Positions 7,306 through 24,458 of a stretch of DNA of 64,000 nt are shown here, piece after piece. The stretch is from the IMG/VR virus record IMGVR_UViG_3300032236_001613, positions 62,001 to 126,000 of that record; one strand, given 5' to 3'. The notes under the pieces were generated by a model. That model had not been told where the DNA came from. It searched no databases and saw only the letters and a list, made by a program, of their open reading frames with translations. How positions within the stretch are numbered: position 1 is the stretch's first letter; every line of letters begins with the position of its first letter. The position numbers were made by a program, and so were the translations under genes.

Positions 7306-7308
7306 TCT

Positions 7309-9395: not shown

Positions 9396-9610
9396 CCGAA
9401 TGATCTCCTTGCATCATGTTCGTTGTCAAACATCTTGCAGCCCCAGTAAGTGAGAGCCTGTGCGTTGAAATAGCCAGGCTCACCCTTAGCCTTGTTCCAT
9501 GCTGCACAGGCTTCTGCAAAACTCTCTGCCTCGTACAGTCCACAAAATTCTGCACCGGAAGAATTACCCGTTGCAGCGTAACCTTCCATCCAGACTTCAT
9601 ATTGTTTCAT
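9392..9610 (-). CDS. Hypothetical protein
   Basis: YEVWMEGYAATG..YWGC pattern; overlap coupling. Confidence 0.7.
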   Translation of the reverse strand: MKQYEVWMEGYAATGNSSGAEFCGLYEAESFAEACAAWNKAKGEPGYFNAQALTYWGCKMFDNEHDARRSFG

Positions 9611-9622
9611 TGGTATCTACTT

Positions 9623-9796
9623 TTAAACGTAGCCCAACCACTGAGCTCCCCAACCTAGTGCACCGATTGCACACAATACGCTACCTAGGCCCAACAAAAT
9701 TCTAGCCCAGATGGGCAATATCTTGAATGCAATAGCTTCATAGCCCAAAGACACAAATAAGAACAAATAACAAATAGCTACAATTAACGGTTTCAT
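9623..9796 (-). CDS. Small membrane protein (57 aa)
   Basis: Manual translation MKPLIVAICYLFLFVSLGYEAIAFKILPIWARILLGLGSVLCAIGALGWGAQWLGYV; AGGAG RBS. Confidence 0.7.
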   Translation of the reverse strand: MKPLIVAICYLFLFVSLGYEAIAFKILPIWARILLGLGSVLCAIGALGWGAQWLGYV

Positions 9797-9839
9797 CTTT
9801 CTGCTCCTTTCAATGTAGAAGTATTATAGCAGATCGAGA

Positions 9840-10145
9840 TTAAGAGAACAACCTCTTATACCAGGGCTGTTCATCATTGACAACTTGTGGTTGTGTATTA
9901 AGAGTGGCGGCGTGCAACTCTCTATTTTGATAGCGCAACCCTTGATTCTCACGAGTGATGTCTAACAAATCATCTCGGCAAGATGCTAGGAGAGTTTCAA
10001 GCTCTTGGTTAAGAGCCTTCAAACGTTCGATAATAGTGCGTTGGCTAACGAACATGGCTTCGTAGTCAGCTAAACGCTGCTCTGCAGTAGGCTGTGTCTT
10101 TTCCAGCTCTTCTTTTTTACGCTGTTCGAATGTAGGTGCTGCCAT
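9840..10145 (-). CDS. Coiled-coil protein
   Basis: Heptads; C-terminus PWYKRLFS; AGGAG RBS. Confidence 0.75.
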   Translation of the reverse strand: MAAPTFEQRKKEELEKTQPTAEQRLADYEAMFVSQRTIIERLKALNQELETLLASCRDDLLDITRENQGLRYQNRELHAATLNTQPQVVNDEQPWYKRLFS

Positions 10146-10156
10146 TTCATGCTCCT

Positions 10157-10187
10157 AAAAAAAATGGGCAGTTTAATGACCTGCCCA
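10157..10187 (-). terminator. Rho-independent terminator
   Basis: TGGGCAG/CTGCCCA stem followed by an 8-T run on the minus strand. Confidence 0.8.
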
Positions 10188-10197
10188 GGTCGGTTAA

Positions 10198-10398
10198 TCA
10201 TCCGGCTACAGCATTGTTCCGGACAATCGACTCGGCTTCGTTACCATAAAGCCCATTAGCAGCCTTGATGGAGATCTGCTCACGCAAACCACCCGACTCA
10301 GTGCCGTTGCCCGAAAGCATACGAGCCACTGCATGGATGCTGTGGAAGCGACGGATAACGCCCGACGGATGGGTAACAAAAATTCGACGATTAGTCAT
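10198..10398 (-). CDS. Small putative DNA-binding protein; paralog of 1..132
   Basis: RRFHSIHAVARMLSGNGTESGGLR; AAGGAG RBS. Confidence 0.75.
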   Translation of the reverse strand: MTNRRIFVTHPSGVIRRFHSIHAVARMLSGNGTESGGLREQISIKAANGLYGNEAESIVRNNAVAG

Positions 10399-10477
10399 TT
10401 CAAACTCCTTGTGTATCTAAAAGGTTTAATCTAACTCAACAGAACTATTATAGCAAAACTCTCAATCTAAGTCAACC

Positions 10478-10759
10478 TCAAACCTTAATAACGCCATGGT
10501 TATAACGAGTCTCCAGTACATCGTAAAACTCGTCAACAGCAGCAAAAAACCGGCAATGACGCGGGCTAGCCAAACGTCCTGCAGCCTTAGCACGCCCATA
10601 GGCCCGATTGAAGTTATCGTGCTCGCTACAAATAGCAACCGCATAATCGATACCTTCGGGCTTTTCAATAAAGGCCACAGTGGCTCCACCACGGCTTTCA
10701 ATCTTTCCGTCCAGATCACGGTTACGATAGTGAATGTACTTGATCTTAGGTGTATTCAT
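10478..10759 (-). CDS. Conserved phage protein
   Basis: GGATVA..YAVAICSEHDNFNRAYGRAKA.GRL pattern; RBS and promoter. Confidence 0.75.
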   Translation of the reverse strand: MNTPKIKYIHYRNRDLDGKIESRGGATVAFIEKPEGIDYAVAICSEHDNFNRAYGRAKAAGRLASPRHCRFFAAVDEFYDVLETRYNHGVIKV

Positions 10760-10815
10760 CTGTCCATCTCCTTTCTGTTTGTGTCTAAGTATTATACTAT
10801 GGTTTTACCAAAAGG

Positions 10816-11355
10816 TCAAGTAATTTTTCTCGAAACAATAAAAGTATCATCTGCACAGTTATATAGCAATGATTCCTTAATTTGTTTCGATACGTTAAAA
10901 GTTTTCGGCATCTCGAACTCATCACTTCCTTGATTATTTTTAGCTCGTGCACCCGTATAACGAGTTTGAGATATTATATTCTTTAGATCATATCCTTTAG
11001 ACTTTGCATATTCTTTAATTTGTCGCTTTAACCACCTAATACCGGCGGTTCCTATGTCTACCCCATTATATTGAGTTCCTAAACTAGTATGAACAATTTT
11101 ATTGTTACTGGGATGGTCAACTGGTGCTATATTTCCAATGTCAATGGATCCATTTTTAGAAAGTGAGAATGACGCAATTACCAATGGTCTATTGCTAGAC
11201 TTTTCAATCACTTTGGCATAATAGTGCCCTGGTATATCCTTAACTTGTTCGAAAGTAATAGATAGCTCTTGTTCTGGATTCTTATACGATTCTAGTATCA
11301 ATATTGAATTAATGTTGATAAAAAAGAATTTGCTTTCTATTTCATGTAGTCTCAT
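10816..11355 (-). CDS. AT-rich late-type protein with capsid-targeting-like N-terminus
   Basis: MRLHEIE start; TAAATA box at 11374-11379; AT-rich. Confidence 0.7.
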   Translation of the reverse strand: MRLHEIESKFFFININSILILESYKNPEQELSITFEQVKDIPGHYYAKVIEKSSNRPLVIASFSLSKNGSIDIGNIAPVDHPSNNKIVHTSLGTQYNGVDIGTAGIRWLKRQIKEYAKSKGYDLKNIISQTRYTGARAKNNQGSDEFEMPKTFNVSKQIKESLLYNCADDTFIVSRKIT

Positions 11356-11384
11356 TCCTACGACCTTTTGCTATATTTAACTCC

Positions 11385-12029
11385 TTAGTGTGCATAGTAG
11401 CTAGTGTTCTGTACGCTGTCGTCCCAGCAGGCGCGGCAGTTACCGCACTCATTGTCTTGAAAGCGGCTAGGGCAATCGTAGCCGTGTGCAGCACCATTCT
11501 TATGCACGGTTGAGGTATGCTCAAAGCCCTTAGGCGGCTCTGCGTCCATTTGCTGGGCACTCATACGGATTACAAGATTGCGTGGACGGCTGCGAAGTCG
11601 AAGGAACTCGCGCACCATACCAAACTCACGGGTAGGCAACCAATGCTCAACCCAAGGAGTCTGCTCTGCTACTTCGGCAATCATCTGCAAGTGATCTACA
11701 CTCTGCAGGTCGCCGCTATCGTGCCAACGGAAGTGTGTTTCACCTTTCAGTAGGCGCACCATAGCAGCAATCCAAGTGTCGCGAGTAACAGTATTGAGCA
11801 GAGCTTCTGCCAAACGAGCATGACGACGGTTGTGTGCTGCCTTAGTGTTGGGTAGTGAATACATTCCGCGCATAGCGTAACACTGGTGGCAGGTGCTGCC
11901 TTCTACTTGGCGCAGGATGCTACCAGTTTGGCAACGGGTAGCACTAAGCCCAAAGCTCTTGCCCGGCATTTTGCTAGGATTGCTGAGTCCACCAACAAAC
12001 TCTGCTGCCTCTGCTTTGGTCCTAAACAT
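11385..12029 (-). CDS. Gp88-like phage protein (Cys-rich)
   Basis: LSNPSKMPG.SF.L.A..C..G..L, C..CYA, FRWHDSGDL, HWLPTRE, C..C..CW; start moved to ATG 12029. Confidence 0.75.
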   Translation of the reverse strand: MFRTKAEAAEFVGGLSNPSKMPGKSFGLSATRCQTGSILRQVEGSTCHQCYAMRGMYSLPNTKAAHNRRHARLAEALLNTVTRDTWIAAMVRLLKGETHFRWHDSGDLQSVDHLQMIAEVAEQTPWVEHWLPTREFGMVREFLRLRSRPRNLVIRMSAQQMDAEPPKGFEHTSTVHKNGAAHGYDCPSRFQDNECGNCRACWDDSVQNTSYYAH

Positions 12030-12083
12030 AGCCAACTCCTTACTGTTACTGTAGGAATAGTATACTATGGTTTTACCAAAAGG

Positions 12084-12527
12084 TCAAGCCAATTCTTTCT
12101 TCTTGGCTCGGACTCGGGCTGTTCCCTTCTTAGTATGACGCACCATGCGAGCGTAACGATGCTGCCCCATCAAGATTTGGATACGACCTTCAAACCCGTC
12201 CTTAATAGGAACGCTCCCAGTTTCAATTTTGAAGTTGTTCTTGTCAAACCACTGAAGCCACTCGTAAAGTTCGGCTTCGGCTTCCTCACCGCGGCTCAAT
12301 ACTGCCACGCAGGGATGCTTATGATAGGCGTTCTCCGGACACCAAACGACGCCATTCTTATCTGCTCGTTTGTAGTCCTCGTCGTACCATGCATAGTCTG
12401 GATAATTACCGTCGACTACAATGCCCACGCAATGCCGCCCGATGCCTACTTCGCCTTCGAGATCCAGTTGACAGTTATTCTTAGCAGCCCAAACCGCCAT
12501 CCAAGTAATCTTTTCATCGCGTGTCAT
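12084..12527 (-). CDS. Hypothetical protein
   Basis: Own promoter and AGGAG RBS. Confidence 0.75.
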   Translation of the reverse strand: MTRDEKITWMAVWAAKNNCQLDLEGEVGIGRHCVGIVVDGNYPDYAWYDEDYKRADKNGVVWCPENAYHKHPCVAVLSRGEEAEAELYEWLQWFDKNNFKIETGSVPIKDGFEGRIQILMGQHRYARMVRHTKKGTARVRAKKKELA

Positions 12528-12581
12528 TGTATTACTCCTTGCTCTAACTATGAGTATATTATAACAGGTTTTACCAAATGG

Positions 12582-12923
12582 TCAAACACAATCTGAGACA
12601 AATTCTGTGTCAGGTGCAACCAGCGTTTCTACAAACCAAGTACCGCCTGTGCCCTGAGTATGCTCTTGTGCGTAGTCTTCTGCAGACTCTACGCTAGGAA
12701 ACGGGCCCGCAAAGTTAAATCCCTTGACAGGATCTCCATGTACTACAACAAGATCCACATTATCATCTTGTCCATCAACATTGGGCGTCCGCATCATGAC
12801 TACAAACCATGCAGCGGCTGTGCAGTACTCCCCGCCATAGTCGTAGGCTGCTTCTTCTTGATCAAAAGGCCCGATAAACTCGAAGCCGCTAGAAAGGTCA
12901 CCAAATAATATAACAAACTGCAT
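12582..12923 (-). CDS. Protein with internal duplication
   Basis: Two copies of V...GD...GF.F.GPF...E.A.DY..E...  WFV. Confidence 0.8.
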   Translation of the reverse strand: MQFVILFGDLSSGFEFIGPFDQEEAAYDYGGEYCTAAAWFVVMMRTPNVDGQDDNVDLVVVHGDPVKGFNFAGPFPSVESAEDYAQEHTQGTGGTWFVETLVAPDTEFVSDCV

Positions 12924-12987
12924 AGACAGTCTCCTTTTGCTATGAGTATATTATAACAGGTTTTACCAAAAAGTCAAGACCTGTGTT

Positions 12988-13353
12988 CTAAAGAGTCAAA
13001 CCTTCGACACCATTTTTCCGAGGTTGCCAGATACACTGGCTCCACTGAACTAGTTCTCGGTCATTCCTGTCATCGTAGGGTTCTAACCATGCCACAGGCA
13101 CCGCGTAAGACATAGGCCTGCCACTATGAGTGGAAGTTCCCCGATCAATCTGCCTACCGTCGGCCAGCACAGCAGTGAGGTCGTGCACGTCACAGGTGAT
13201 GCGTTGCCCGCCTGTTGTCTCTACAGTGGCGTGCCTGGCAGGTGCTCGCACCACAGCGTATTGCAGTTCATCGGGCGGTGGCGTGCCCTGCTGGTCAATC
13301 TGAATCACACGGACCCGTTGTCCAACTTTAAATCCCGTACTCATATTAAACAT
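12988..13353 (-). CDS. Hypothetical protein (FKVGQRV / WSQCIWQP)
   Basis: Own promoter and RBS; motifs shared with 2459..3001. Confidence 0.7.
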   Translation of the reverse strand: MFNMSTGFKVGQRVRVIQIDQQGTPPPDELQYAVVRAPARHATVETTGGQRITCDVHDLTAVLADGRQIDRGTSTHSGRPMSYAVPVAWLEPYDDRNDRELVQWSQCIWQPRKNGVEGLTL

Positions 13354-13405
13354 TTTCTCCTTGCTAGTGTCTGTGTATTATAGCAGGTTTTACCAAGAAG
13401 TCAAG

Positions 13406-13640
13406 TGCTTCTCTCTGCTGGCGGTGTTTGTCATCTCACCACAAACAATTATGTGGTATCCGCATCCCAACACAGAGAGACTTTCGTGTGCCAACGCCCG
13501 TTAGGTTAGACGGCAGTATTGCTACTGGAGACCATTGACAGTCATTCTCGCGAATGATATGTTGTTCTCAAACCACCCGTGGTTGTCACACCACTTCATC
13601 ATGCGGGTCACATTAGTGGCTGACTAAGCCACGTGGTCTT
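13406..13640 (-). ncRNA. Candidate multi-hairpin structured ncRNA
   Basis: ORF-free; GNRA-capped stems TCATTC-GCGA-GAATGA and CAGTA-GCAA-TACTG; 8-bp TCTCTCTG/CAGAGAGA enclosing a 7-bp stem. Confidence 0.6.
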
Positions 13641-13643
13641 TAA

Positions 13644-13928
13644 TTAACTAAAAATGTCAGCCAAAATCTGGTCAATTTCATGCTGACGTGCACGTTCGCC
13701 ATGAACGCGATCCATGAACTCTGACATCATGCCCGGACGATTGTGGACATAGTCCAGCTGGCCGTATGCCGAAATGTCAAAGTAACGGAAGGATGGTGCA
13801 CCAGGATAGTACTTAATCCACTGACCGCGCTGCAGGACCAAACGACCGTCCTGGATAGCACGCCGAGTGGCCGGATCCGAAAGAACCGGAGTAGGAAGAA
13901 ACTGACGACCCTTACGATTGATAACCAT
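13644..13928 (-). CDS. Hypothetical protein
   Basis: Promoter 13978-14006 and AAGGAG RBS. Confidence 0.7.
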   Translation of the reverse strand: MVINRKGRQFLPTPVLSDPATRRAIQDGRLVLQRGQWIKYYPGAPSFRYFDISAYGQLDYVHNRPGMMSEFMDRVHGERARQHEIDQILADIFS

Positions 13929-14002
13929 ATTAATTGCTCCTTACAAAAAAGTGTTTAAACTCTAACTCAACAGAACTATTATACTAAACTTTTACCAAAA
14001 GG

Positions 14003-14164
14003 TCAATAAAGACTTGAAAGATTTTCACGTTGCCAAACCCAGAGATCCTGTATCACATGAAACGCAGGTCCAACAGGGCCAATAGCGACGCCAGTGCGGC
14101 TATCCACTTCAAAAGTCTGCCAACCGCCTACAACACTACGGCAAGTGTATTCTTTGACAAACAT
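14003..14164 (-). CDS. Small hypothetical protein (53 aa)
   Basis: Manual translation MFVKEYTCRSVVGGWQTFEVDSRTG...; AAGGAG RBS. Confidence 0.65.
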   Translation of the reverse strand: MFVKEYTCRSVVGGWQTFEVDSRTGVAIGPVGPAFHVIQDLWVWQRENLSSLY

Positions 14165-14173
14165 GTCTGCTCC

Positions 14174-14326
14174 TTAGAGTTTGATCAGCACATCAGGATA
14201 GGCAGTAGCAAATGTTCGTGTTCGTTCACCACGCGGATCATAGTAATAATCCACTCGTTGACAATAGCGTTTGGCCAGCCACTTCACCACGAACACAGGC
14301 AGTATCACAGTCCATTTTGCTAACAT
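14174..14326 (-). CDS. Small hypothetical protein (50 aa)
   Basis: Manual translation MLAKWTVILPVFVVKWLAKRYC...; AAGGAG RBS, promoter 14353-14380. Confidence 0.65.
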   Translation of the reverse strand: MLAKWTVILPVFVVKWLAKRYCQRVDYYYDPRGERTRTFATAYPDVLIKL

Positions 14327-14376
14327 TGTTTGCTCCTTACTAGTATCTATATAGTATAGCAGGTTTTACCAAAAGG

Positions 14377-14595
14377 TCAACCAACCAAACCCTCATCCAT
14401 CATCTCCAAGAGTTTGATGGTGTATTCTCGCTCGTGACTGTAAGTCCTTGACTCGTTAGCCCATTCCTCACCATAGACAGCGAGGAACTCGTTGTAGATC
14501 TCTCGAAGAGAGATTTGAGGAAAACGGAATGCAACCTCATGGTACAGTTGGCCTTGGTTGACCATCTCGCGCATCTCGATGTTGATCTCTTTCAT
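14377..14595 (-). CDS. Hypothetical protein
   Basis: Own promoter 14620-14647. Confidence 0.7.
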   Translation of the reverse strand: MKEINIEMREMVNQGQLYHEVAFRFPQISLREIYNEFLAVYGEEWANESRTYSHEREYTIKLLEMMDEGLVG

Positions 14596-14649
14596 CTTAC
14601 CCTCGTTTGCTATGAATATATTATAGCAGGTTTTACCAAAAGGTCAAAC

Positions 14650-14844
14650 TTAGAATTGGCGAACGCAGAGTGACTGAATATGCGGAGCAGGCGCATAAAA
14701 ACTATTTTGTTCCTGCTGATGCAGCCATCCAGTACCTGCAGCTAGACAGGCCTCTTTGCTTTCAAAAGGCCCAATCTGGGTTATAGCTGAGCCGCCGCGA
14801 TGGTCACTCGCCGCAATAGTAAGAATCAATAACCAACCTGCCAT
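14650..14844 (-). CDS. Small exported/membrane protein
   Basis: WLLIL..., F.SKEAC..A pattern; GGAG RBS. Confidence 0.7.
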   Translation of the reverse strand: MAGWLLILTIAASDHRGGSAITQIGPFESKEACLAAGTGWLHQQEQNSFYAPAPHIQSLCVRQF

Positions 14845-14845
14845 A

Positions 14846-15046
14846 TTATTTCTCCTTCTTCAATTTAGGAAAGTGATAGGCTAAATTTTCCCAGAGACCT
14901 AGAACTATTGCTGCGGGTATAAACAGCACCATTAGACGGCTCCTGTCTAGGCCTAGCCCTAGTAATGGCATAGTCGTTAGTATCACAATACCTGCTATGA
15001 TCAGAGCCACAACTACGCTCAGTAAAATGACCAATAGAGTCACCAT
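14846..15046 (-). CDS. Small two-TM membrane protein
   Basis: Hydrophobic; 1-nt spacing with neighbours. Confidence 0.7.
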   Translation of the reverse strand: MVTLLVILLSVVVALIIAGIVILTTMPLLGLGLDRSRLMVLFIPAAIVLGLWENLAYHFPKLKKEK

Positions 15047-15047
15047 A

Positions 15048-15251
15048 TTACTTGTCCTTCTTGAAAAGATCCACTACAGACATCAAAATGCTCTTCAGTA
15101 AGAACACTACAAAGCCTACAACCGCGTATGGCAGACAGATGATAAAGCCTATAACAGGCACAGCCATCACAGCAGCTCCTAATGAGAACACGGCAGCGAA
15201 TGCTACTATGCACCATAAAATCAACAGAGTTGAGTAACTAACGGTAATCAT
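15048..15251 (-). CDS. Small two-TM membrane protein
   Basis: Hydrophobic; 1-nt spacing. Confidence 0.7.
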   Translation of the reverse strand: MITVSYSTLLILWCIVAFAAVFSLGAAVMAVPVIGFIICLPYAVVGFVVFLLKSILMSVVDLFKKDK

Positions 15252-15252
15252 A

Positions 15253-15471
15253 TCACTTGACCTTTTTTGGAAAAATCTTTTTCCAAAGCATAATGGGTGA
15301 TGTGATCAGTAACACGCCCAGCATCAATATACCACCCGGAATTAGAATAATCCACAGTATGGGCCTCTGCTTGGTGCCGAAATGTGCGCCAAACTTCATA
15401 GAAACCATGCCGGCTATTCCCAATGCCAAAAACAATACAACCAGCAAGGTTATGAGACTGATAGTAATCAT
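15253..15471 (-). CDS. Small two-TM membrane protein
   Basis: Hydrophobic; AAGGAG RBS. Confidence 0.7.
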   Translation of the reverse strand: MITISLITLLVVLFLALGIAGMVSMKFGAHFGTKQRPILWIILIPGGILMLGVLLITSPIMLWKKIFPKKVK

Positions 15472-15480
15472 AACATCTCC

Positions 15481-15774
15481 TTAAAACGGAATATCGTCGT
15501 CAAGCTGACGAGTAGATGGCCGAGGAGGACCTACGAACTCACTCTTAGCAACAGCCCGATCAACCCAGTATTGTACCTCCTCTTCGGTCATATAACAGGT
15601 TTCTTCAGGATGTGGCTGCGGCTTACCACGATAGTGCGGGTTCTCAATCCACACGTCGTAATCAGTAAGAATCCATTGACTATCCTTGTAACGATCATAA
15701 TCACCTACATTGTAGGCATATTCACGCATGGCTTCAGCTGGAGTGGCTACGCGATCTTCTTCATCATAAAACAT
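15481..15774 (-). CDS. Protein ending in SSB-tail-like DDDIPF
   Basis: C-terminus LDDDIPF; own promoter and RBS. Confidence 0.8.
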   Translation of the reverse strand: MFYDEEDRVATPAEAMREYAYNVGDYDRYKDSQWILTDYDVWIENPHYRGKPQPHPEETCYMTEEEVQYWVDRAVAKSEFVGPPRPSTRQLDDDIPF

Positions 15775-15828
15775 TGAAGACTCCTTACTGTTACTGTAGG
15801 AATAGTATACTACGGTTTTACCAAAAGG

Positions 15829-16095
15829 TCAAGATTTTTTGTATAGAGAGTGAAGGGCTTCGTGCTGCTCCAAAGCTTTCAACTGCTTCTTCACCTGAGT
15901 GAGATAGAGGTAGCGGCGATTGACTTCGGATCGGGCCAACTCACCATCGCAGGTCAAGTTCTCAGGGCTAAGGTCAGACTCTAGATGACCTGCCAGATGC
16001 CGACGGTGTTGCGGATCGTTGAGGTCCAGATCGGCCTCCTTGAAGAAGCGATTGATCTGATTGATGTGATCTAGATATTCAGTGAGTTCTTCCAT
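15829..16095 (-). CDS. Conserved phage protein
   Basis: LSPENLTCDGEL motif; own promoter and RBS. Confidence 0.75.
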   Translation of the reverse strand: MEELTEYLDHINQINRFFKEADLDLNDPQHRRHLAGHLESDLSPENLTCDGELARSEVNRRYLYLTQVKKQLKALEQHEALHSLYKKS

Positions 16096-16152
16096 AGGTT
16101 GCTCCTTGCTAGTGAGTCAGTATTATACTAAGGTTTTACCAAAAGGTCAACA

Positions 16153-16359
16153 TCAATTCACAAGATTTACACGCTCTAAACGGTAAAAGAAATCTTGCTT
16201 AGGGTCAACAATTCCAAACTCCACAAAGTATTCCGAACCTGTAAGTTCGTCATGGCAATGGAACCCGTCATCTTGTGTGTAGTCAATACGAAACACATCA
16301 CCATTCTGTATAAAGAATACTGAGTTCTGTGCAATGTCATGCAATTCGTTATGGTCCAT
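16153..16359 (-). CDS. Hypothetical protein
   Basis: Stop/start overlap. Confidence 0.7.
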   Translation of the reverse strand: MDHNELHDIAQNSVFFIQNGDVFRIDYTQDDGFHCHDELTGSEYFVEFGIVDPKQDFFYRLERVNLVN

Positions 16360-16691
16360 TATGCCTTCTCCTCAGTTTGAGCTTTGAGCTTGGCTAACTT
16401 TTTTTCGAGATTACTGATTTCTTTCAAGCGGGCCTTTTCCTTTCGGATAGCCTCTTTCTTCTTTTCTTCCTCTTCTCGAATTTTACGTTCAGCATCCTGC
16501 TTCTGATGTTCATTCCACCAGTCCAGATGCTGTTTCTTAGTAACTCCGCACTCTGTCCAATCAATGCGATCCACAATAGTAGGATCTGCTCGCATAGCAG
16601 CACAAACTACGGCTTCGAACTGTTTGACACGTTTCTCAAGGTTTCGTGAATTACGTTCTCGATCATAACTATCATCTACATAGCAAGGCAT
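16359..16691 (-). CDS. Hypothetical protein with charged coiled coil
   Basis: MPC start, WW.EH..QD motif; AAGGAG RBS. Confidence 0.75.
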   Translation of the reverse strand: MPCYVDDSYDRERNSRNLEKRVKQFEAVVCAAMRADPTIVDRIDWTECGVTKKQHLDWWNEHQKQDAERKIREEEEKKKEAIRKEKARLKEISNLEKKLAKLKAQTEEKA

Positions 16692-16703
16692 ATCATATTC
16701 TCC

Positions 16704-17057
16704 TTAGTCTGAACTGTCGTAGGCGTTGATCTGACCGCAATGGATACACTTATACTGGTCATAGCCGCGGCCTAGATTCTGTAAGAACTTCCACTCATGC
16801 CCAGAACACTTAGCCGCAGTCTCCTTAGAGACATAACCGTGACCACCACAGTGATCACAGATTTTACGGAAATGACTGTAACGATGACGATTCTCTGGAG
16901 TATCAGGCTTGCCATGCAGGTTGTAGCTGTTGATAGAAAGATTCCACCCACCATGACCACGGCAGCGAGGACACTCTACAGTATAATTAAGCCAAGGCTC
17001 CTTGCGTGGATGATCCAAGAATGCATCTGGATGATCTGGCGTAAGAAAGTCTGACAT
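16704..17057 (-). CDS. Zinc-finger protein (DnaJ-type CxxCxGxG)
   Basis: CPRCRGHG, CDHCGGHG, CIHCG. Confidence 0.8.
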   Translation of the reverse strand: MSDFLTPDHPDAFLDHPRKEPWLNYTVECPRCRGHGGWNLSINSYNLHGKPDTPENRHRYSHFRKICDHCGGHGYVSKETAAKCSGHEWKFLQNLGRGYDQYKCIHCGQINAYDSSD

Positions 17058-17110
17058 ATGTTACTCCTTGCTCTAACTATGAAACTATTATAGCAGGTTT
17101 TACCAAAAGG

Positions 17111-17257
17111 TCAACCGTTATCTGGAACTTCCTTGAAGCCAAATGCCGTAAGGTCATCAAGGTTAATGACTTCCCGGAGATAGTTCAGTAGCATCAGCTC
17201 GGCTGCATCGAGATCTTCTGCATCAAACTCTGTTTCGAAATTGATTTTGAATTTCAT
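17111..17257 (-). CDS. Small acidic protein (48 aa)
   Basis: Manual translation MKFKINFETEFDAEDLDAAELMLLNYLREVINLDDL...; stop lies in the next -35 box. Confidence 0.55.
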   Translation of the reverse strand: MKFKINFETEFDAEDLDAAELMLLNYLREVINLDDLTAFGFKEVPDNG

Positions 17258-17462
17258 AGGCTTCCTCACGGCTCATTTCATTATTGATACGATTGAAAAT
17301 GCAGTAGTCAGACACTCCTGCATCATACCCGGTCTTATAAGCATGACCACATTTGGCGTCGTGCCCGTTAACGGCATCGTAATACTGCTGATCTACACGA
17401 CCTTCTTCACGCCCGTCGAAGTAACCACGAGCATAGGCATAATAGGTGCTATCGTAAGACAT
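17223..17462 (-). CDS. Hypothetical protein
   Basis: YARGYFDGR..YKTGYDAG repeat-like motif; AAGGAG RBS. Confidence 0.7.
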   Translation of the reverse strand: MSYDSTYYAYARGYFDGREEGRVDQQYYDAVNGHDAKCGHAYKTGYDAGVSDYCIFNRINNEMSREEAYEIQNQFRNRV

Positions 17463-17480
17463 TGTGTTGCTCCTTTAATC

Positions 17481-17690
17481 TTATACCAATTTCATATAGT
17501 TAAATTCGGTCTTATTGCAGCGGCTGCAGATTCTGGTTTGATATATCACAAAACTGTAGACTCGACCCTTTCTATGCCAGGTTTCATTAAGAGACATGTT
17601 TGTCTCTTCATGATCCTCTCCATTGAGAAACTCACGAACGTAGTATTCGTTTAGATTAGCCCACTGACTCCACTTGTGTATAATGCACAT
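17481..17690 (-). CDS. Hypothetical protein
   Basis: MCIIHKWSQW..RICSRCNK pattern. Confidence 0.65.
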   Translation of the reverse strand: MCIIHKWSQWANLNEYYVREFLNGEDHEETNMSLNETWHRKGRVYSFVIYQTRICSRCNKTEFNYMKLV

Positions 17691-17747
17691 ATTACTTCAG
17701 CTCCTTGCTCTAACTGTGAATACATTATAGCAGGTTTTACCAAAAAG

Positions 17748-17990
17748 TCAACCTTCTTCGTCTTCTTCCTCGTCGTCTTCGGGCCAATCGTCGTCCTCAT
17801 CGTCTTCCCATTCTCCGTTACAATCTTCTCCCCAGGGTTCGTCGATGACGAGATCTAGGTTCTCGTCAAAAACTTCTTGGTTGACAATGGATACGTTGAC
17901 ATGGTTGTGTTCATAGTTTGCCAAAGCTTCAACATCAGTTTCTGCTTCAACTTCATACTGATGGGTGATTCGAACGTAGAATTTGGGCAT
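17748..17990 (-). CDS. Acidic hypothetical protein
   Basis: Own promoter and RBS; poly-D/E tail. Confidence 0.75.
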   Translation of the reverse strand: MPKFYVRITHQYEVEAETDVEALANYEHNHVNVSIVNQEVFDENLDLVIDEPWGEDCNGEWEDDEDDDWPEDDEEEDEEG

Positions 17991-18041
17991 CTCAATCTCC
18001 TTGTTATTGAAATAGAATTATACTAAGGTTTTACCAAAAGG

Positions 18042-18227
18042 TCAACCAGCTGGCGTTATATTCACAACAGTGAATAGTCCTCCCGGATAGGCTTCGAGAG
18101 CAACTGAAGGAAATAAATCAACGGCAGCATTTAGATCCGCTGCTTCAATCGTTAGACTTTCTAGTCTCCCAGGGTGAGGGAACTCAGGAGGATCTGATAC
18201 TTGAAAAGTTATAGTCCATAGACTCAT
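18042..18227 (-). CDS. Hypothetical protein
   Basis: GGAG RBS, overlap. Confidence 0.6.
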   Translation of the reverse strand: MSLWTITFQVSDPPEFPHPGRLESLTIEAADLNAAVDLFPSVALEAYPGGLFTVVNITPAG

Positions 18228-18460
18228 ATTACTACTCCATGTTCTTTATTGGATAGAATTACTTTTAATGCAATAGAATACGCTTCTTCAGCATCTTCAC
18301 AATTAAACAATTCAGGAAAACTACCCCGATCTAGATAGACATTGCAGATGTACTGGCCAAACCGCCAGTCCCGCTCATCACGACCACGACGATAGTGTGC
18401 GATCCAATAACGGCGCTCGAGGTTCAATAGGTGAACGGTAAGTGTGCGAGAAAACTGCAT
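18224..18460 (-). CDS. Hypothetical protein
   Basis: R.GQ...N.Y.....PELF..ED pattern. Confidence 0.65.
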   Translation of the reverse strand: MQFSRTLTVHLLNLERRYWIAHYRRGRDERDWRFGQYICNVYLDRGSFPELFNCEDAEEAYSIALKVILSNKEHGVVI

Positions 18461-18521
18461 AGATAATATTTACCATGTTTATCAGCCAATATTATAGCAG
18501 CTACTGCCAAACGATCAATAT

Positions 18522-18899
18522 TTACTTACTAGATGTCTGGACGAAGTGAGCTTGAGACCTATAGCCTAGTTCGCGTAGGCTAGTATTAATCAACTGCATG
18601 ACCGTCTTAGAAACGGGCGTGTCTGTTCTTGGAGGTTGAATACTCCAGGGCATTCCTCGCTCTTTGGGTTTCAAAAATGGATATCGATACTTCTCACCAT
18701 TAGGGTAACGAAACTCTTGCCCAGTTTTTTTGAGCAAGGTATTGTAAAGCCAATAAAGCATGTTGCTACGCTGACGTGCACGATCGTAGATATCTTTAGA
18801 AGATTGATCAATCTGTTCGATACCCCGACGCAAGGCACTGAGAGCTAATGCTTGAAGCTCGGGGTCTGGGTTACTTTCTAACAGTTCTTGTATCTGCAT
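18522..18899 (-). CDS. Late protein with capsid-targeting-like N-terminus
   Basis: MQIQELLE; TAAATA 4 nt upstream of ATG. Confidence 0.75.
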   Translation of the reverse strand: MQIQELLESNPDPELQALALSALRRGIEQIDQSSKDIYDRARQRSNMLYWLYNTLLKKTGQEFRYPNGEKYRYPFLKPKERGMPWSIQPPRTDTPVSKTVMQLINTSLRELGYRSQAHFVQTSSK

Positions 18900-18919
18900 A
18901 CTGTATTTATTTGTAGAAA

Positions 18920-19225
18920 GTTGCAGCGTCTTCGCTGGGTACGAAACGCTGCTGCCTCTTGATTTTTTGGAGATAAATCCTTCCAGCCCCGCTGAATCGG
19001 GCTCAAGTTATCCTACTTGTGCGACAAACAATAGAAACTTTCGTTTCTACCCGGCAAAGCCCTCATCATAACGACAATGACTCTACCCGCGGTTATACCG
19101 TTTCATTAGTCCCCTAGGAGCATAGCTAGCATTCAGACCGCTAGACGACACTAAGGGTTTCGCTTTCGGTTCAGGCATATGTAGTTATCAACATCACAGA
19201 CCGCTACAGCGGGGTTTTTGGTTTA
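18920..19225 (-). ncRNA. Candidate ~300-nt structured ncRNA downstream of tRNA-Leu
   Basis: ORF-free; long-range CCCCGCTG/CAGCGGGG, TAGAAAC-GAAA-GTTTCTA hairpin, GCAGCGT/ACGCTGC stem. Confidence 0.55.
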
Positions 19226-19230
19226 ATAGT

Positions 19231-19519
19231 TGGTGCCCTGAGCCGGACTCGAACCGGCACGCCAGTGGCGTCAGATTTTCTTACTACTACAGTTTTCACT
19301 GCCAGCTTGCGCTGTTTGTAGTCTGGACTATACCTTGACCTTAGCTATTGCTTTAGGTCCTTGCCGTCTAGTCTCTACACCTTCCTATTTCTAGGCTTGG
19401 CTCGGTATTAGCAGTTAAGCCTTCACCGAATTTGACAAGTTACATCTTAAAAGTTTCCTAATAAGAGCTCAAATCTTTTCTCTAAGTCTGATGCGTCTAC
19501 CTTGTTCCGCCATCAGGGC
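19231..19519 (-). tRNA. tRNA-Leu(UAA) split by a group I intron (exons 19484-19519 and 19231-19279)
   Basis: Acceptor GCCCTGA/TCAGGGC, anticodon stem TCAGA/TCTGA, loop CT-T^AA-AA after splicing, long variable arm, CCA. Confidence 0.92.
19280..19483 (-). mobile_element. Group I self-splicing intron (IC3-type, 204 nt, no ORF)
   Basis: P AAATTCGGTGAA, Q AATACCGAGC, R GTAGAGACTAGACGG, S AAGGTATAGTCC; follows a U and ends in G; inserted after U34. Confidence 0.9.
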
Positions 19520-19572
19520 AAATTATCAACTAACTATCTATTTAATATACGCTAATTATCTTCAGTTGTCAA

Positions 19573-19715
19573 ATGAGTTTTAGCCTCAGTTTACTATTCT
19601 CTTGCTACCTGATGTAAGTGCTTACAACACTTTTTACTAGTATCACAGGCTACCCGCTTCGAACAAGGTTAGGCTTGTACTTGTACTTGACCCGACGAGC
19701 TGGGCTAAAACTCAT
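19573..19715 (-). ncRNA. Candidate 143-nt rod-shaped ncRNA with its own promoter
   Basis: Perfect 13-bp terminal inverted repeat ATGAGTTTTAGCC; predicted +1 lies 7 nt after TATAAT of TTGACC-17-TATAAT. Confidence 0.6.
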
Positions 19716-19771
19716 AAAACTATTATATGCTAGCACCAGCATAAGGTCAACAATTAACAATAAATACTCCT

Positions 19772-20947
19772 ATGCGCATCCAAGAGCTACTATTAGAATA
19801 CAACCGACAGATTACCCTACAAAAGATAGGCGATCAGCTGACTCAAACAGCAGCTAGAGAACACACTACTGCAGAAGAGGCTATAGCTGCACTGGAAGAA
19901 ATGGATCCAACCGCAAATAAACAGTATACTCCTTGGCTGGCACGACAATACATTAAGCAGCAGTTTAGATTAGAGGACGCAGATAGAATACGCACAGTAC
20001 TAGATAACTTTGGTCAACTTAAATCAAGACTACCTGTTGAACAAAGAGATATAGGACGTATGGATTTTTACCAACTTGATGATTTAATTAATCAAGTATT
20101 AGATGTTAAACTAGAGGTGGATAAGCCTATTGAAGGAGGTACTTTCCCTATAGTTCCTGACTCCCGAGTCTTATACAACGGACCATTAGGGCAATTAGCT
20201 ATACCAGAAACCCGAGAAGCCAGTTGCGAATTAGGTCGTGGTACTGAATGGTGTACGGCTTATACAAAATCAAATAATCAATTTGATAGTTATAATCGAA
20301 GAGGTCCTTTATACGTATGGCGAGACAAAAATGGTGAGAAATATCAATTCCATTTCAGCGGCGGCCTACAAATGATGGATAGTCGAGATCGCCCTATAGA
20401 AAAAGATAAAATAGATTATTTTAGAAAACAGCATCCTGTACTTAAAAAATTGTTTCGACAAATAGAATCTCAAGCGTTAAAAGACCCTATATTAGCAACT
20501 CAGTATGCCGAAAAAGTAATTGGAGGACGTTGGCCCGAAGGCGAGGCCACAATAGCACAAACCTCACAGGCAGCATATTACTACGCTCGAAAAATAATCA
20601 AAAGTCGGTTTCCTGAGGGGGAAGCAGCATTATTAGAACCATCAACTGACATTAATTTTCTAATTTTTTATGCCGAACAAGTAATCAAAGGTCGTTGGCC
20701 TGAAGCTGAAGAAATGATAGCACAAAACCCATCGGCAGCATTTTACTACGCCCGACACATAATCAAAGGTCCTTTTCCTGAGGGGGAAGACGCAATAGCT
20801 CAAGATGACAGGCTCGCTTACAACTATGCTGTAGAAATACTTAAAGATCGTTTCCTAAAAGGAGAAAAGACTCTACAAAAGAGCAATGTTTATTGGTACC
20901 ATTACAAAAAACATTTCGGAATAAAACAACGTAAAGGTAAAACCTAA
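19772..20947 (+). CDS. Putative internal head protein with C-terminal helical repeats; paralog of 23127..24458
   Basis: MRIQELLLE; DPT..K.YT.WL, WCTA..N.F..Y..GP.Y, GEKYQFHF; ~6 repeats of A..YA..IIK.RWPEGE..I. Confidence 0.85.
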   Translation: MRIQELLLEYNRQITLQKIGDQLTQTAAREHTTAEEAIAALEEMDPTANKQYTPWLARQYIKQQFRLEDADRIRTVLDNFGQLKSRLPVEQRDIGRMDFYQLDDLINQVLDVKLEVDKPIEGGTFPIVPDSRVLYNGPLGQLAIPETREASCELGRGTEWCTAYTKSNNQFDSYNRRGPLYVWRDKNGEKYQFHFSGGLQMMDSRDRPIEKDKIDYFRKQHPVLKKLFRQIESQALKDPILATQYAEKVIGGRWPEGEATIAQTSQAAYYYARKIIKSRFPEGEAALLEPSTDINFLIFYAEQVIKGRWPEAEEMIAQNPSAAFYYARHIIKGPFPEGEDAIAQDDRLAYNYAVEILKDRFLKGEKTLQKSNVYWYHYKKHFGIKQRKGKT

Positions 20948-22467: not shown

Positions 22468-23130
22468 ATGCGTGCACAAGAAGTATTTGAATCTTATAGA
22501 TGGAGCTGGTCAGACGATGATGCAGAACAGCTCTCTAGTAAGATCCCACCCAAATATCTAGAAAGATTACGTAATCTCACTGTCCGGGATCGACGAGTTA
22601 GCAACTTTATGGATACCCATAACATTAACTTGGTTCAATTTCTCACAAGATTTCAGGAACAAAAGGGTTTAGATCCAGTAAACAAAACTGAGTTAGCATC
22701 TGATTTTATTGTTAAGATTCCGAAAAATAATCCTGAAGGTTTTTATTTTGCAAATAAATCTAATGAAGTTAGAGCCGGTGCCGAATTAGATATTGCAGAT
22801 CAAGCACATACAGATCTATATCGCGTTTATATGAAGACCAAACTTCGCGCAGAAAAGATAAACACTCCATTTACATTAACATTAAAAGAAGCCGCCGACA
22901 TCTTTAAAGCACAGGGAGGCAAATGTGCATTAACTGGAGAAAAGTTAGGAAAAGGACTAGGATCATCACCCAGTATGGATCAACGAGTTCCTAGAGTGAG
23001 AGGCGGCCCTGGTTATACTAAAGACAATGTACAATGGGTTACCGCACAGATTAACTTTGCTAAACAGAATTTAACTAATGAAGAATTTGCAGATCTTTGT
23101 AAAAAAGTTGCTGCACATTCCGGGAATTAG
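22468..23130 (+). CDS. HNH-like (bba-Me) endonuclease domain protein
   Basis: QGGKCALTG..SPSMDQ..GYTKDNVQWV..IN.AK; N-terminus MRAQEVFE. Confidence 0.7.
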   Translation: MRAQEVFESYRWSWSDDDAEQLSSKIPPKYLERLRNLTVRDRRVSNFMDTHNINLVQFLTRFQEQKGLDPVNKTELASDFIVKIPKNNPEGFYFANKSNEVRAGAELDIADQAHTDLYRVYMKTKLRAEKINTPFTLTLKEAADIFKAQGGKCALTGEKLGKGLGSSPSMDQRVPRVRGGPGYTKDNVQWVTAQINFAKQNLTNEEFADLCKKVAAHSGN

Positions 23131-24458
23131 AGTCTGTACCATTTGTCCTTTAACTTTACTAAAAACCTCGATACAGTTTGATACGCATAATGGCCATCAT
23201 ACTCTGTAGGCCCCGATTCCATGTCCCGAATAAGTTCGTTCACAGTATCTTTGAATTGCCTACGATATGTTAAGTCTGCTTGATCTGCGTTGCCTAAGGT
23301 CTTGATTTCATGCTTTCCTGGACCATCCGTGGGTAGATAATAGCGATCAGCTACAACTACTACAGCAGAAAAATCAGGTGGAAATATGGCATATACAAGT
23401 TGGGATGCTTTTTGTCCACGACTGGGTGCAACTCTGAGTGTTTGTAAAAAAGAACCCATATGTACATTAAAAAGTTCTTCAAAAGGATCAACCAACTCCC
23501 ATTCAAACATACCACTTTCTACTAGAATGCAAGAGTACATGCCATTTTCTAATTGACGAGCTTTCCATTTAAGATATTGTTTTGTATGGTTTAATCCATT
23601 ATAAGATGGCTTACGTGGTGGCTTTAACCAACTTAAACGATATTCTTTAGCTTGGTCTGCAAAGATTTTTGATAGCTCAGGAAACCTTCTAACTAGACTG
23701 CTGCCCCACTCACTAATGTCATTATCATGTTCGTCCATAAACTGGTGGCTAGGAAAATGAAACTGGTATTTTTCCCCAGTATGTACAGGCTGTCTAGGTA
23801 TTATAATATACATAGGACCATCTTGGTTATAGCTGTTAAACATGTTGTTGTTTGTAGCAGCTGTACACCAACGAGTGTTCTGCCCATAAAAGCAAGCTGC
23901 TTCTCGATCATTTGGTTTTATAACAATTAGACGATCATCACGAAATACTTCATCGTAATCGCCGCGGGGTGACTTCTGCTTTTGGTCATCTCTACGACTT
24001 CTGACTGCAGAAAAAGCGTTATATAACGTTCTAAAATTATAAGCGTTAATATCTCTAAGATTAGTTAATCTGCGACGTTTGTAGTCATCAAATTTTTCTA
24101 GAGAATCTGTAATCTCAGTAGCTACATCTTCTGCATGCATCGCGTCCTTACAATAGTTTTTTATTAACCATTGAGTGTATTCTTTATGTGGGGTGGGATC
24201 CATTAATTCAAAAATATTTACTAAGATTTTTTTAGACTCAGCTTCGATTGCATGGCGAGGATTATCATAGTCGTTGTGTTCGTCATAGGCCATACATAAA
24301 ATACTGTACCCTCTTTCACTAAGTAGGTCAGCAGATTTTAGACGTTGTATGTGATTATAACTTTCCAATTCAAAGAAATGTTTATACAACTTATCACCAT
24401 AATTCTTAACGGTGATTTCATGATTATATTCGACAAGGAACAGTTCGTTGAGTAACAT
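23127..24458 (-). CDS. Putative internal head protein; paralog of 19772..20947
   Basis: MLLNELFLVE; DPTPHKEYTQWL, WCTAATNNNMFNSYNQDGPMY, GEKYQFHF. Confidence 0.85.
   Translation of the reverse strand: MLLNELFLVEYNHEITVKNYGDKLYKHFFELESYNHIQRLKSADLLSERGYSILCMAYDEHNDYDNPRHAIEAESKKILVNIFELMDPTPHKEYTQWLIKNYCKDAMHAEDVATEITDSLEKFDDYKRRRLTNLRDINAYNFRTLYNAFSAVRSRRDDQKQKSPRGDYDEVFRDDRLIVIKPNDREAACFYGQNTRWCTAATNNNMFNSYNQDGPMYIIIPRQPVHTGEKYQFHFPSHQFMDEHDNDISEWGSSLVRRFPELSKIFADQAKEYRLSWLKPPRKPSYNGLNHTKQYLKWKARQLENGMYSCILVESGMFEWELVDPFEELFNVHMGSFLQTLRVAPSRGQKASQLVYAIFPPDFSAVVVVADRYYLPTDGPGKHEIKTLGNADQADLTYRRQFKDTVNELIRDMESGPTEYDGHYAYQTVSRFLVKLKDKWYRL

What the first reader, a model, noticed from the sequence alone, without database searches (positions are those of the whole stretch)
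19573..19750. Self-contained 143-nt rod RNA with a 13-bp closing stem: 6S-like or Y-like decoy
Seen: TTGACC-17-TATAAT (19750-19722) predicts +1 at 19715, the first base of a perfect 13-bp inverted repeat whose partner (19573-19585) abuts the -35 box of the tRNA-Leu promoter. Inside are an asymmetric bubble, further helices (CTTGTT/AGCAAG, AAGTG/CACTT) and a T-loop-like GTTCGAA. Known: 6S RNA is a rod with a central bubble that sequesters sigma70 holoenzyme, and bacterial Y RNAs pair their ends and have tRNA-like arms. Inference: a phage 6S mimic could shut down sigma70 transcription at the switch to late genes.
Basis: partly seen in the sequence, partly recalled or inferred. Interest (0 to 1): 0.72.

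Follow-up and report, generated by a model that had tools for sequence, protein, structure and literature searches.

The report
New structured RNA in phage tRNA arrays

Summary
The sequence features are real: a perfect 13-bp inverted repeat (19573-19585 / 19703-19715), a TTGACC-17-TATAAT promoter that places +1 at the first base of the repeat, and a second promoter abutting its far end.

Comparative data identify it as an RNA gene on the minus strand. I found 10 distinct homologues in 12 IMG/VR phage contigs, one copy per record. All lie inside tRNA arrays on the tRNA strand, usually 0-5 nt after one tRNA and 0-36 nt before the next.

The fold has a closing stem P1 (13-21 bp, free in sequence), a three-way junction with hairpin P2, and a long arm P3-P3b-P4-P5. 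Of the base-pair cells, 98.2% pair, 23 of 39 pairs change on both sides, and every helix has at least one compensatory change.

No Rfam family matches, and the phage has no Ro gene. There is no 6S-type bubble and no conserved Ro-binding stem. T4 and T5 stable RNAs share the genomic layout but not the model.

Best reading: a new family of stable RNA, released from tRNA transcripts by tRNA-processing enzymes and acting in trans. No expression data exist.

The parts
19722..19750 (-). Sigma70-type promoter of the RNA: TTGACC (19750-19745), 17-nt spacer, TATAAT (19727-19722). Predicted +1 at 19715.
   Evidence: 11 of 12 matches. It is the most upstream of 24 such minus-strand promoters in G000 60979-81750. 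In related metagenome contigs the listed variants fall in the spacer (19737, 19739) and upstream (19751-19756), not in the hexamers (the list is truncated).
19573..19715 (-). The RNA gene (143 nt): a member of a new structured-RNA family of phage tRNA arrays.
   Evidence: Covariance models R1-R3 score it at 128-136 bits. There are 10 distinct homologues. Covariation is shown.
19700..19715 (-). P1, 5' strand (RNA positions 1-16).
   Evidence: Pairs with 19573-19589. P1 is 13-21 bp in all members and differs in sequence between them. 12 of its 13 modelled pairs show changes on both sides.
19573..19589 (-). P1, 3' strand (RNA positions 127-143, with A130 bulged).
19668..19696 (-). P2 hairpin on the three-way junction (GU.GGGU ... 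GCCU.AC) with a variable loop of 6-19 nt.
   Evidence: Pair types seen: CG:4/GC:4 at one pair; CG, UA and UG at another; G.U to A-U at a third. The last change is also seen in metagenome variants at 19693.
19661..19666 (-). P3, 5' strand UUGUUC.
   Evidence: Pairs with GAAUAG at 19594-19599. Two U-A to C-G compensatory changes occur at different pairs, and C-G to U.G changes occur as well. Two G.U wobbles are invariant in all 10 sequences. The metagenome variant at 19661 gives U.G.
19594..19599 (-). P3, 3' strand GAAUAG, followed by the invariant junction strand UAAA (19590-19593).
19644..19657 (-). P3b 5' strand (GC, 19656-19657), an internal loop, and P4 5' strand GCCUGUG (19644-19650).
   Evidence: P3b outer pair: GC:6, UA:2, AU:1, CG:1. 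P4: one pair changes CG to AU in 2 sequences; the rest are invariant.
19604..19614 (-). P4 3' strand CA-U-CAGGU (19607-19614, U bulged), then A, then P3b 3' strand GC (19604-19605).
19635..19642 (-). Conserved 8-nt palindrome UACUAGUA in the large asymmetric loop between P4 and P5.
   Evidence: Identical in 8 of the 10 distinct sequences. It reads UCCUAGGA, still a palindrome, in L129 and in the sequence shared by L136 and L137. The self-duplex is -7.4 and -11.8 kcal/mol respectively. It is either a mini-hairpin or a homodimer contact; this is inference.
19616..19632 (-). P5 variable hairpin with apical triloop GUA (19623-19625).
   Evidence: All 5 modelled pairs change on both sides. By my reading of the alignment and the folds, the triloop is NUA: GUA, AUA and CUA occur, GUA most often. 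Its closing pair is U-A, C-G or U.G.
19544..19572 (-). Second sigma70-type promoter (TTGACA-17-TATATT), for tRNA-Leu. Its -35 box abuts the RNA's last base.
19231..19519 (-). tRNA-Leu(UAA). Exon 1 is 19484-19519, the group I intron about 19280-19483, exon 2 19231-19279.
   Evidence: Rfam Intron_gpI, 64.3 bits. Exons were aligned to the intronless tRNA-Leu(UAA) that follows the RNA in G001.

Best explanation
It is a gene for a structured, non-coding, stand-alone RNA of 130-149 nt. The RNA belongs to a previously undescribed family carried, one copy per record, in the tRNA arrays of a clade of uncultured jumbo phages of about 330 kb. The sequencing runs that hold the window's DNA are freshwater and lake metagenomes.

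Shown:
- The RNA strand is the tRNA strand (window minus strand).
- The fold is a closing stem P1 of 13-21 bp whose sequence drifts freely, a three-way junction with highly conserved joining strands (CUC, C, UAAA), a short hairpin P2, and a long arm P3-P3b-P4-P5.
- The long arm carries conserved internal loops, an 8-nt palindrome and an NUA triloop.

Inferred:
- Host sigma70 RNA polymerase transcribes the RNA, together with tRNAs in most phages. In this phage it has a dedicated promoter whose predicted start is the first base of P1.
- Its ends are made by the enzymes that mature the flanking tRNAs. RNase P cuts at the 5' end of the downstream tRNA. An endonuclease cut and exonuclease trimming act after the upstream tRNA and back to P1.
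- The blunt P1 helix protects the ends, so the RNA should accumulate as a stable species, like the T4 and T5 stable RNAs.
- The conserved junction and loops, not P1, P2 or P5, are the working surface. They most likely bind a protein or another RNA in trans, possibly as a homodimer through the palindrome.

The partner and the benefit to the phage are unknown.
For: Homologues:
- The first was found with an exact-word scan. Only the element aligns to G001 (84% identity over window 19571-19707); the flanks do not.
- More came from pattern scans and covariance-model scans.
- Total: 12 contigs, 10 distinct sequences, one hit in each of the six records scanned whole.

Context: all ten lie on the same strand as every tRNA within 3 kb. 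Most are 0-5 nt after a tRNA and 0-36 nt before the next, commonly tRNA-Glu, then the element, then tRNA-Leu(UAG).

Structure:
- 98.2% of 383 cells pair, against 77% in shuffles and 29-49% when partners are slid.
- 23 of 39 pairs change on both sides; 0 of 500 shuffles reach any measure.
- Every helix has at least one compensatory change.

Strand: dozens of cells are G.U pairs, including two wobbles invariant in all ten. These would be A.C mismatches on the other strand.

Selection: 50 of 130 columns are invariant in six members, although DNA ligase in the same phages is only 54-80% identical.

Promoters. In this phage the RNA has its own promoter and tRNA-Leu has another, so neither depends on the other in cis.

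No conserved ORF: the AUG in the window lies in the variable P1.

Precedent: T4 rnaC and rnaD, and eight T5 'stable RNAs with unknown functions', lie in the same way inside tRNA clusters. T4 RNAC and RNAD are detected RNAs of still unknown function (PMC9697503).
Against: - There is no expression evidence. No public RNA run holds the locus beyond a few words that probably come from the tRNA or intron, so the transcript, its ends and its stability are inferred.
- There is no terminator after the RNA, so 3'-end formation relies on assumed processing.
- There are only 10 distinct sequences from related phages, and the alignment was fitted to the model, which inflates the pair counts somewhat.
- P4 is almost invariant, so it has little independent support.
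- The function, and the choice of trans-acting over cis-acting, rest on one argument (separate promoters in this phage) plus analogy.
- The host is unknown.
Confidence: 0.75

Rival explanations
1. Cis-acting processing or insulating module of tRNA transcripts. The long P1 helix and its core would serve as an entry or cleavage site (RNase III or RNase E) that separates neighbouring tRNAs or shields the upstream tRNA's CCA end. The excised piece would be a by-product.
For: The element always sits between or next to tRNAs on their strand. In L027, L132, L133 and L138 the P1 helix runs on into the (A)CCA end of the upstream tRNA, pairing with UGG(U) after the element.
Against: A processing helix does not need about 50 invariant internal nucleotides, a conserved junction or covarying inner helices. 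In this phage the RNA has no upstream tRNA, has its own promoter, and the downstream tRNA-Leu has a separate promoter. In L128 and L134, homing-endonuclease genes separate it from both tRNAs by 745-970 nt, yet it is conserved.
Confidence: 0.1
2. A catalytic or ligand-binding RNA. It would be a small self-cleaving ribozyme that helps cut the tRNA precursor, or an aptamer. This would explain the very high conservation of the junction and loop nucleotides.
For: The conservation pattern (variable helices, invariant junction and loops, invariant G.U wobbles) is typical of ribozymes and aptamers. The ends coincide with processing sites.
Against: No known ribozyme or riboswitch family matches, even at lax thresholds. 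There is no expression platform or terminator. No cleavage site can be pointed to.
Confidence: 0.07
3. A 6S-like decoy of sigma70 RNA polymerase.
For: It is an elongated RNA with paired ends, encoded by a phage whose genome is rich in sigma70-type promoters.
Against: No 6S model matches at E<=10. It is 130-149 nt long with a three-way junction. There is no two-sided central bubble; the largest loop is 11 nt opposite 1-2 nt. Sequence conservation is concentrated in loops, unlike 6S, which by my general knowledge conserves shape rather than sequence. The promoter context looks early, not late.
Confidence: 0.04
4. A mimic of a tRNA or anticodon arm that titrates a host tRNA-directed enzyme, such as an anticodon nuclease of a defence system or a modification enzyme.
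For: It lies in tRNA arrays. The apex of P5 always reads NUA, most often GUA, the tyrosine anticodon, flanked by U and A in most members.
Against: The flanking U and A covary as a base pair (U-A, C-G, U.G), so the apex is a triloop, not a 7-nt anticodon loop. There is no T arm, D arm or CCA end, and neither ARAGORN nor the Rfam tRNA model sees it. The phage has a normal tRNA-Tyr.
Confidence: 0.04
5. A Y-RNA-like (YrlA-like) RNA that tethers Ro60/Rsr.
For: It has paired ends and a GUUCGAA string.
Against: No Y RNA or other Rfam family matches at E<=10. The closing stem has no conserved sequence. GUUCGAA is a helix strand and reads GUUUGAA or GUCCAAA in relatives. The phage has no TROVE gene, although the search's controls were positive.
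Confidence: 0.01
6. A DNA-level element, either a miniature transposon with terminal inverted repeats or a protein-binding palindrome, rather than an RNA.
For: It has perfect terminal inverted repeats and an internal 8-bp palindrome.
Against: There is one copy per genome. The 'terminal repeats' differ between genomes while the interior is conserved, the opposite of a transposon. Helices depend on G.U pairs that exist on one strand only. I saw no target-site duplication in the flanks (my reading of the sequence).
Confidence: 0.01

Closest known systems
T4 rnaC and rnaD (species 1 and 2 RNAs) and the T5 stable RNAs (RNAI, RNAIII, RNAIV, RNA1, RNA2, RNA2H, RNA3, RNAX)
   Same: They are small RNAs of about 70-170 nt (RNAX is 719 nt) encoded inside phage tRNA clusters on the tRNA strand. 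They start 0-1 nt after a tRNA (T4 rnaD, T5 RNAIII), are interspersed with homing-endonuclease genes and sigma70 promoters, and have no known function (PMC9697503).
   Different: There is no detectable homology: model R1 with filters off and model R3 find nothing at those genes. T4 rnaC folds with a tRNA-like T arm; this RNA has none. The T4 and T5 RNAs were shown to accumulate; this one has no expression data.
GOLLD and ROOL large RNAs
   Same: They are phage or prophage RNAs of unknown function, often beside tRNA islands. They were defined by covariation, and they form homo-oligomers (PMC12286853). The palindrome here hints at self-association.
   Different: They are 500-800+ nt with elaborate pseudoknotted folds. 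This RNA is about 140 nt. No Rfam GOLLD or ROOL match was found.
6S RNA
   Same: It has paired 5' and 3' ends and an elongated shape.
   Different: This RNA has no central bubble, is shorter, has a three-way junction and gives no model match.
Bacterial Y RNAs (YrlA)
   Same: They have paired ends and, in some phages and bacteria, an association with tRNA-like modules (general knowledge).
   Different: This RNA has no conserved Ro-binding helix, no T-loop and no Ro gene nearby, and gives no model match.

Membership tests
6S RNA | Match to the Rfam 6S covariance models | tested here: not met
   cmscan of window 19100-19900 at E<=10 and of three homologous loci at E<=0.1 found no 6S hit.
6S RNA | Large two-sided central bubble between two long irregular helices, about 180 nt in all | tested here: not met
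   The consensus is a three-way junction. The largest loop is 11 nt on one strand and 1-2 nt on the other. Length is 130-149 nt.
6S RNA | Binds sigma70 holoenzyme and templates product RNA | not testable with these tools
   This needs biochemistry.
Y RNA / YrlA | Match to the Rfam Y RNA models | tested here: not met
Y RNA / YrlA | Sequence-conserved Ro-binding helix formed by the 5' and 3' ends | tested here: not met
   P1 varies at 12 of its 13 modelled pairs. Only the innermost pairs are conserved.
Y RNA / YrlA | tRNA-like module with a T-loop | tested here: not met
   GUUCGAA is the 5' strand of P3, with compensatory changes. Its C varies to U, and its U to C.
Y RNA / YrlA | Ro60/Rsr (TROVE) partner encoded nearby or in the genome | tested here: not met
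   PF05731 is absent from the 328-kb phage record, with positive controls. The host is unknown, so a host Ro cannot be excluded.
tRNA | Cloverleaf recognised by ARAGORN or Rfam RF00005 | tested here: not met
   Neither tool reports anything at 19573-19715 or at the homologues.
Phage tRNA-cluster stable RNAs (T4 rnaC/rnaD, T5 RNAs), as a functional class | Encoded within a tRNA cluster on the tRNA strand, abutting tRNA genes | tested here: met
   All 10 members meet this. The T4 and T5 layouts are shown.
Phage tRNA-cluster stable RNAs (T4 rnaC/rnaD, T5 RNAs), as a functional class | Accumulates as a discrete stable RNA during infection | not testable with these tools
   No RNA run holds the locus.
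T4 rnaC/rnaD and the T5 RNAs, as homologous families | Shared sequence and structure | tested here: not met
   Models R1 (filters off) and R3 give no hit on those genes.
GOLLD / ROOL | Match to the Rfam models; size 500-800+ nt | tested here: not met
   this RNA is about 140 nt.
Miniature inverted-repeat transposable element | Many copies per genome, conserved terminal repeats, target-site duplication | tested here: not met
   There is a single copy. The terminal helix differs between genomes. I saw no duplication in the flanks (my reading).

The most novel reading that the evidence does not exclude
This is a new class of phage regulatory or structural RNA whose conserved three-way-junction core and palindromic loop act by a mechanism with no described counterpart. 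One possibility is a self-associating (dimeric) RNA particle made from tRNA transcripts that captures a host translation or tRNA-metabolism factor. Another is a small new ribozyme. If so, it could give a tractable, 140-nt entry point to the decades-old question of what the 'stable RNAs' in phage tRNA clusters (T4, T5, GOLLD, ROOL) do.
Probability: 0.2. Interest if true: 0.8.

Novelty: new variant of a known kind. Interest (0 to 1): 0.55.

Why it matters
Phage tRNA clusters have been known since the 1970s to encode extra stable RNAs (T4 species 1 and 2, several in T5) whose function is still unknown. GOLLD and ROOL show that such RNAs can be elaborate. This family adds a small, sharply defined member: about 140 nt, a clear secondary structure, about 50 invariant nucleotides and a candidate dimerisation palindrome. 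It is more conserved than the proteins of the same phages, so it is probably important to them. Its size makes it suitable for chemical probing, structure determination and pull-downs, even though the phages are uncultured. It also warns annotators that gaps in tRNA arrays of jumbo phages can hold RNA genes that tRNA finders and Rfam miss.

Tried and rejected
- Rfam at lax thresholds on the locus and on three homologous loci found only tRNAs and the group I intron.
- blastn of the element against 50,697 cultured phage records gave only chance hits. The nearest cultured DNA ligase is 34% identical or less, so there is no cultured relative.
- A scan of 185,579 species genomes with a two-anchor pattern gave 10 hits, none confirmed by the model.
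- Loci found through the neighbouring 391-aa protein (8 viral, 15 metagenomic) lack the element. The closest contig starts inside the gene.
- 80 further related phage fragments scanned with the models gave nothing except one 15-bit partial hit, taken as noise.
- "It replaces a missing tRNA-Tyr" is rejected. ARAGORN's default run missed tRNA-Tyr, but the gene exists at G000 194127-194211.
- The anticodon-loop reading of the P5 apex is weakened by covariation of the closing pair.
- A 5'-UTR element of the plus-strand gene at 19772 is rejected. Homologues are not next to that gene, and the G.U pairs fit only the minus strand.
- A short ORF (21 codons from the AUG at 19715) is not conserved.
- A second conserved RNA downstream of tRNA-Leu: no similarity between the window and G001 there.
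- A minus-strand terminator after tRNA-Leu: none seen.

Full report
**Source**

The window is bases 62001-126000 of a 328-kb IMG/VR virus record, G000 (37% G+C, 92% complete by CheckV). The DNA runs that hold it are freshwater and lake metagenomes. It encodes DNA ligase and giant tail-fibre-like proteins. Its nearest cultured relatives share 34% or less ligase identity, so the phage group is uncultured and the host is unknown.

**Observation**

- The perfect 13-nt inverted repeat (19573-19585 / 19703-19715) is there. It is the only perfect, separated repeat of that length in the window.
- TTGACC-17-TATAAT (19750-19722) and TTGACA-17-TATATT (19572-19544) both lie on the minus strand, each with 11 of 12 matches.
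- The first promoter puts +1 at 19715, the first base of the repeat. The -35 box of the second abuts the last base.
- Downstream lies tRNA-Leu(UAA), 19519-19231. A group I intron of about 204 nt interrupts it after U34 (Rfam 64 bits).
- Folded alone, the 143-mer is only modestly better than shuffles (z = -2.5). The single sequence therefore proves little.

**Homologues**

Loci found through the neighbouring protein lacked the element. Related contigs in four lake metagenomes hold it at about 93% identity.

An exact-word scan of IMG/VR found a 327-kb phage, G001. Only the element aligns there (84% identity over window 19571-19707), and it sits between tRNA-Met and an intronless tRNA-Leu(UAA). 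Further pattern scans, and covariance models run over records related through DNA ligase, brought the family to 12 contigs and 10 distinct sequences. Each of the six records scanned whole gave one hit.

Every member lies in a tRNA array. Within 3 kb all tRNAs are on the element's strand and none on the other. It usually starts 0-5 nt after a tRNA's CCA and ends 0-36 nt before the next tRNA. The commonest order is tRNA-Glu(UUC), element, tRNA-Leu(UAG).

In L128 and L134, GIY-YIG-like and HNH homing-endonuclease genes have been inserted on either side. T4 segB and the T5 heg genes sit in their tRNA clusters in the same way.

**Structure**

On the model-fitted alignment of the 10 distinct sequences:
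- 98.2% of 383 pair cells are standard pairs, against 77% in shuffles and 29-49% when partners are slid.
- 23 of 39 pairs change on both sides.
- No shuffle out of 500 reaches any of the five measures.

| Helix | Support |
|---|---|
| P1 (13-21 bp) | Differs almost completely in sequence between members but stays paired |
| P2 | CG/GC and G.U/A-U exchanges |
| P3 (UUGUUC / GAAUAG) | Two independent U-A to C-G exchanges, plus C-G to U.G |
| P3b | Four pair types at one pair |
| P4 | One C-G to A-U exchange |
| P5 | Changes at all pairs |

The variants listed in the metagenome contigs fit the fold. G23 to A turns a G.U into A-U in P2. C55 to U turns C-G into U.G in P3. The others fall in loops.

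Dozens of cells are G.U pairs, including two wobbles invariant in all ten. These would be mismatches on the other strand, so the RNA is read from the tRNA strand, which is the window's minus strand.

In six members, 50 of 130 columns are invariant. They are concentrated in the junction strands (AG-CUC-GU, CUAACCUUG, UAGUAAAC), P4 and the loops.

The loop between P4 and P5 holds the palindrome UACUAGUA. In the most divergent members it reads UCCUAGGA, a double change that keeps the palindrome. It is either a two- to three-pair mini-hairpin or an intermolecular contact. This is one evolutionary event and only suggestive.

The P5 apex is a triloop NUA whose closing pair covaries.

**What it is not**

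- No Rfam family matches the window locus at E<=10, nor three homologous loci at E<=0.1.
- There is no two-sided central bubble, so the 6S architecture is absent.
- P1 is not sequence-conserved and the phage has no TROVE gene, so the Y RNA features are absent.
- It is not a tRNA.
- The idea that it stands in for a missing tRNA-Tyr failed: the phage has tRNA-Tyr and tRNAs for all 20 amino acids.
- It is not a transposon-like DNA element. It is single-copy, with variable ends and a conserved interior.
- It has no conserved ORF.

**How it most likely works**

Shown: a conserved, strand-specific, covarying RNA fold placed like a gene in tRNA operons.

Inferred from the anatomy and from established tRNA-processing pathways: host RNA polymerase transcribes it with the tRNAs. 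RNase P cutting at the downstream tRNA, together with cleavage and trimming after the upstream tRNA, frees it. The long blunt P1 protects its ends.

In this phage the upstream tRNA link is absent. Two plus-strand genes lie between tRNA-Met and the element, and a consensus promoter starts transcription exactly at P1. tRNA-Leu has its own promoter. Keeping a dedicated promoter argues that the RNA itself is the product and acts in trans, rather than being a processing spacer.

That promoter is the first of 24 near-consensus sigma70 promoters on the minus strand over 21 kb of small ORFs. The whole genome has 60, against about 20 in shuffles. This looks like an early region, so early expression is more likely than a role at the late switch.

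**Comparison and novelty**

The closest known things are functional analogues: T4 rnaC and rnaD, and the eight annotated T5 stable RNAs. They have the same placement and size class and equally unknown function. My models do not match them.

GOLLD and ROOL share the tRNA-island habitat and self-assembly, but they are far larger.

I therefore rate this a new RNA family within a known, unexplained kind of phage gene. No paper found in the library describes it.

**Limits**

- There are no transcript data.
- Ten related sequences are few.
- The alignment is model-fitted.
- The host, the partner and the function are unknown.

Noticed in passing
window 19231-19519 (-): tRNA-Leu(UAA) is interrupted after U34 by a group I intron of about 204 nt, the position known from cyanobacterial and plastid tRNA-Leu. 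ARAGORN misses the gene. The equivalent tRNA-Leu in phage G001 has no intron. The tRNA plus intron resembles stretches of Agrobacterium phage Atu_ph07 and of a 735-kb uncultured phage at 72-74% identity.
   Followed up: partly
window 1-19750 (-) = G000 60979-81750: 24 near-consensus (11-12 of 12) sigma70-type promoters lie on the minus strand in 21 kb of small ORFs. The whole genome has 60, against about 20 in shuffles. It looks like an early region read by host polymerase.
   Followed up: partly
L027, L132, L133, L138: In four family members the closing helix continues into the (A)CCA 3' end of the upstream tRNA gene, which pairs with UGG(U) just after the element. In the primary transcript the tRNA's 3' end would therefore be held in the helix.
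   Followed up: no
L128 542-1168 and 1934-2389; window 22468-23130: Free-standing homing-endonuclease genes (GIY-YIG-like, HNH) flank the RNA in one phage. An endonuclease VII/HNH-like ORF lies beside tRNA-Met in the window. T4 segB and the T5 heg genes sit in their tRNA clusters in the same way.
   Followed up: partly
window 19207 and 22438; G000 63312; L026 about 1737 and 1967: A motif CT[AG]CAGCGGGGT[AT]TT recurs on the plus strand next to the minus-strand tRNA genes in both large phages. Its meaning is unknown; it could be a terminator-like hairpin or an endonuclease site.
   Followed up: no
G000 194127-204000 (outside the window): This is the main tRNA array. With the intron-bearing tRNA-Leu and two genes that ARAGORN's default run missed (tRNA-Tyr at 194127-194211, tRNA-Ile(GAU) at 200370-200443), the phage encodes about 30 tRNAs covering all 20 amino acids.
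   Followed up: yes
window 46101-63050 (+): Three consecutive giant ORFs of 1807, 2445 and 1361 aa. The first was scanned and matches tail-fibre and collagen-like families.
   Followed up: no
window 19772-20947 (+) and 23127-24458 (-): Two proteins share the same PHROG families of unknown function (phrog_28193, phrog_17056). They flank the tRNA-Met locus on opposite strands and may be paralogues.
   Followed up: no
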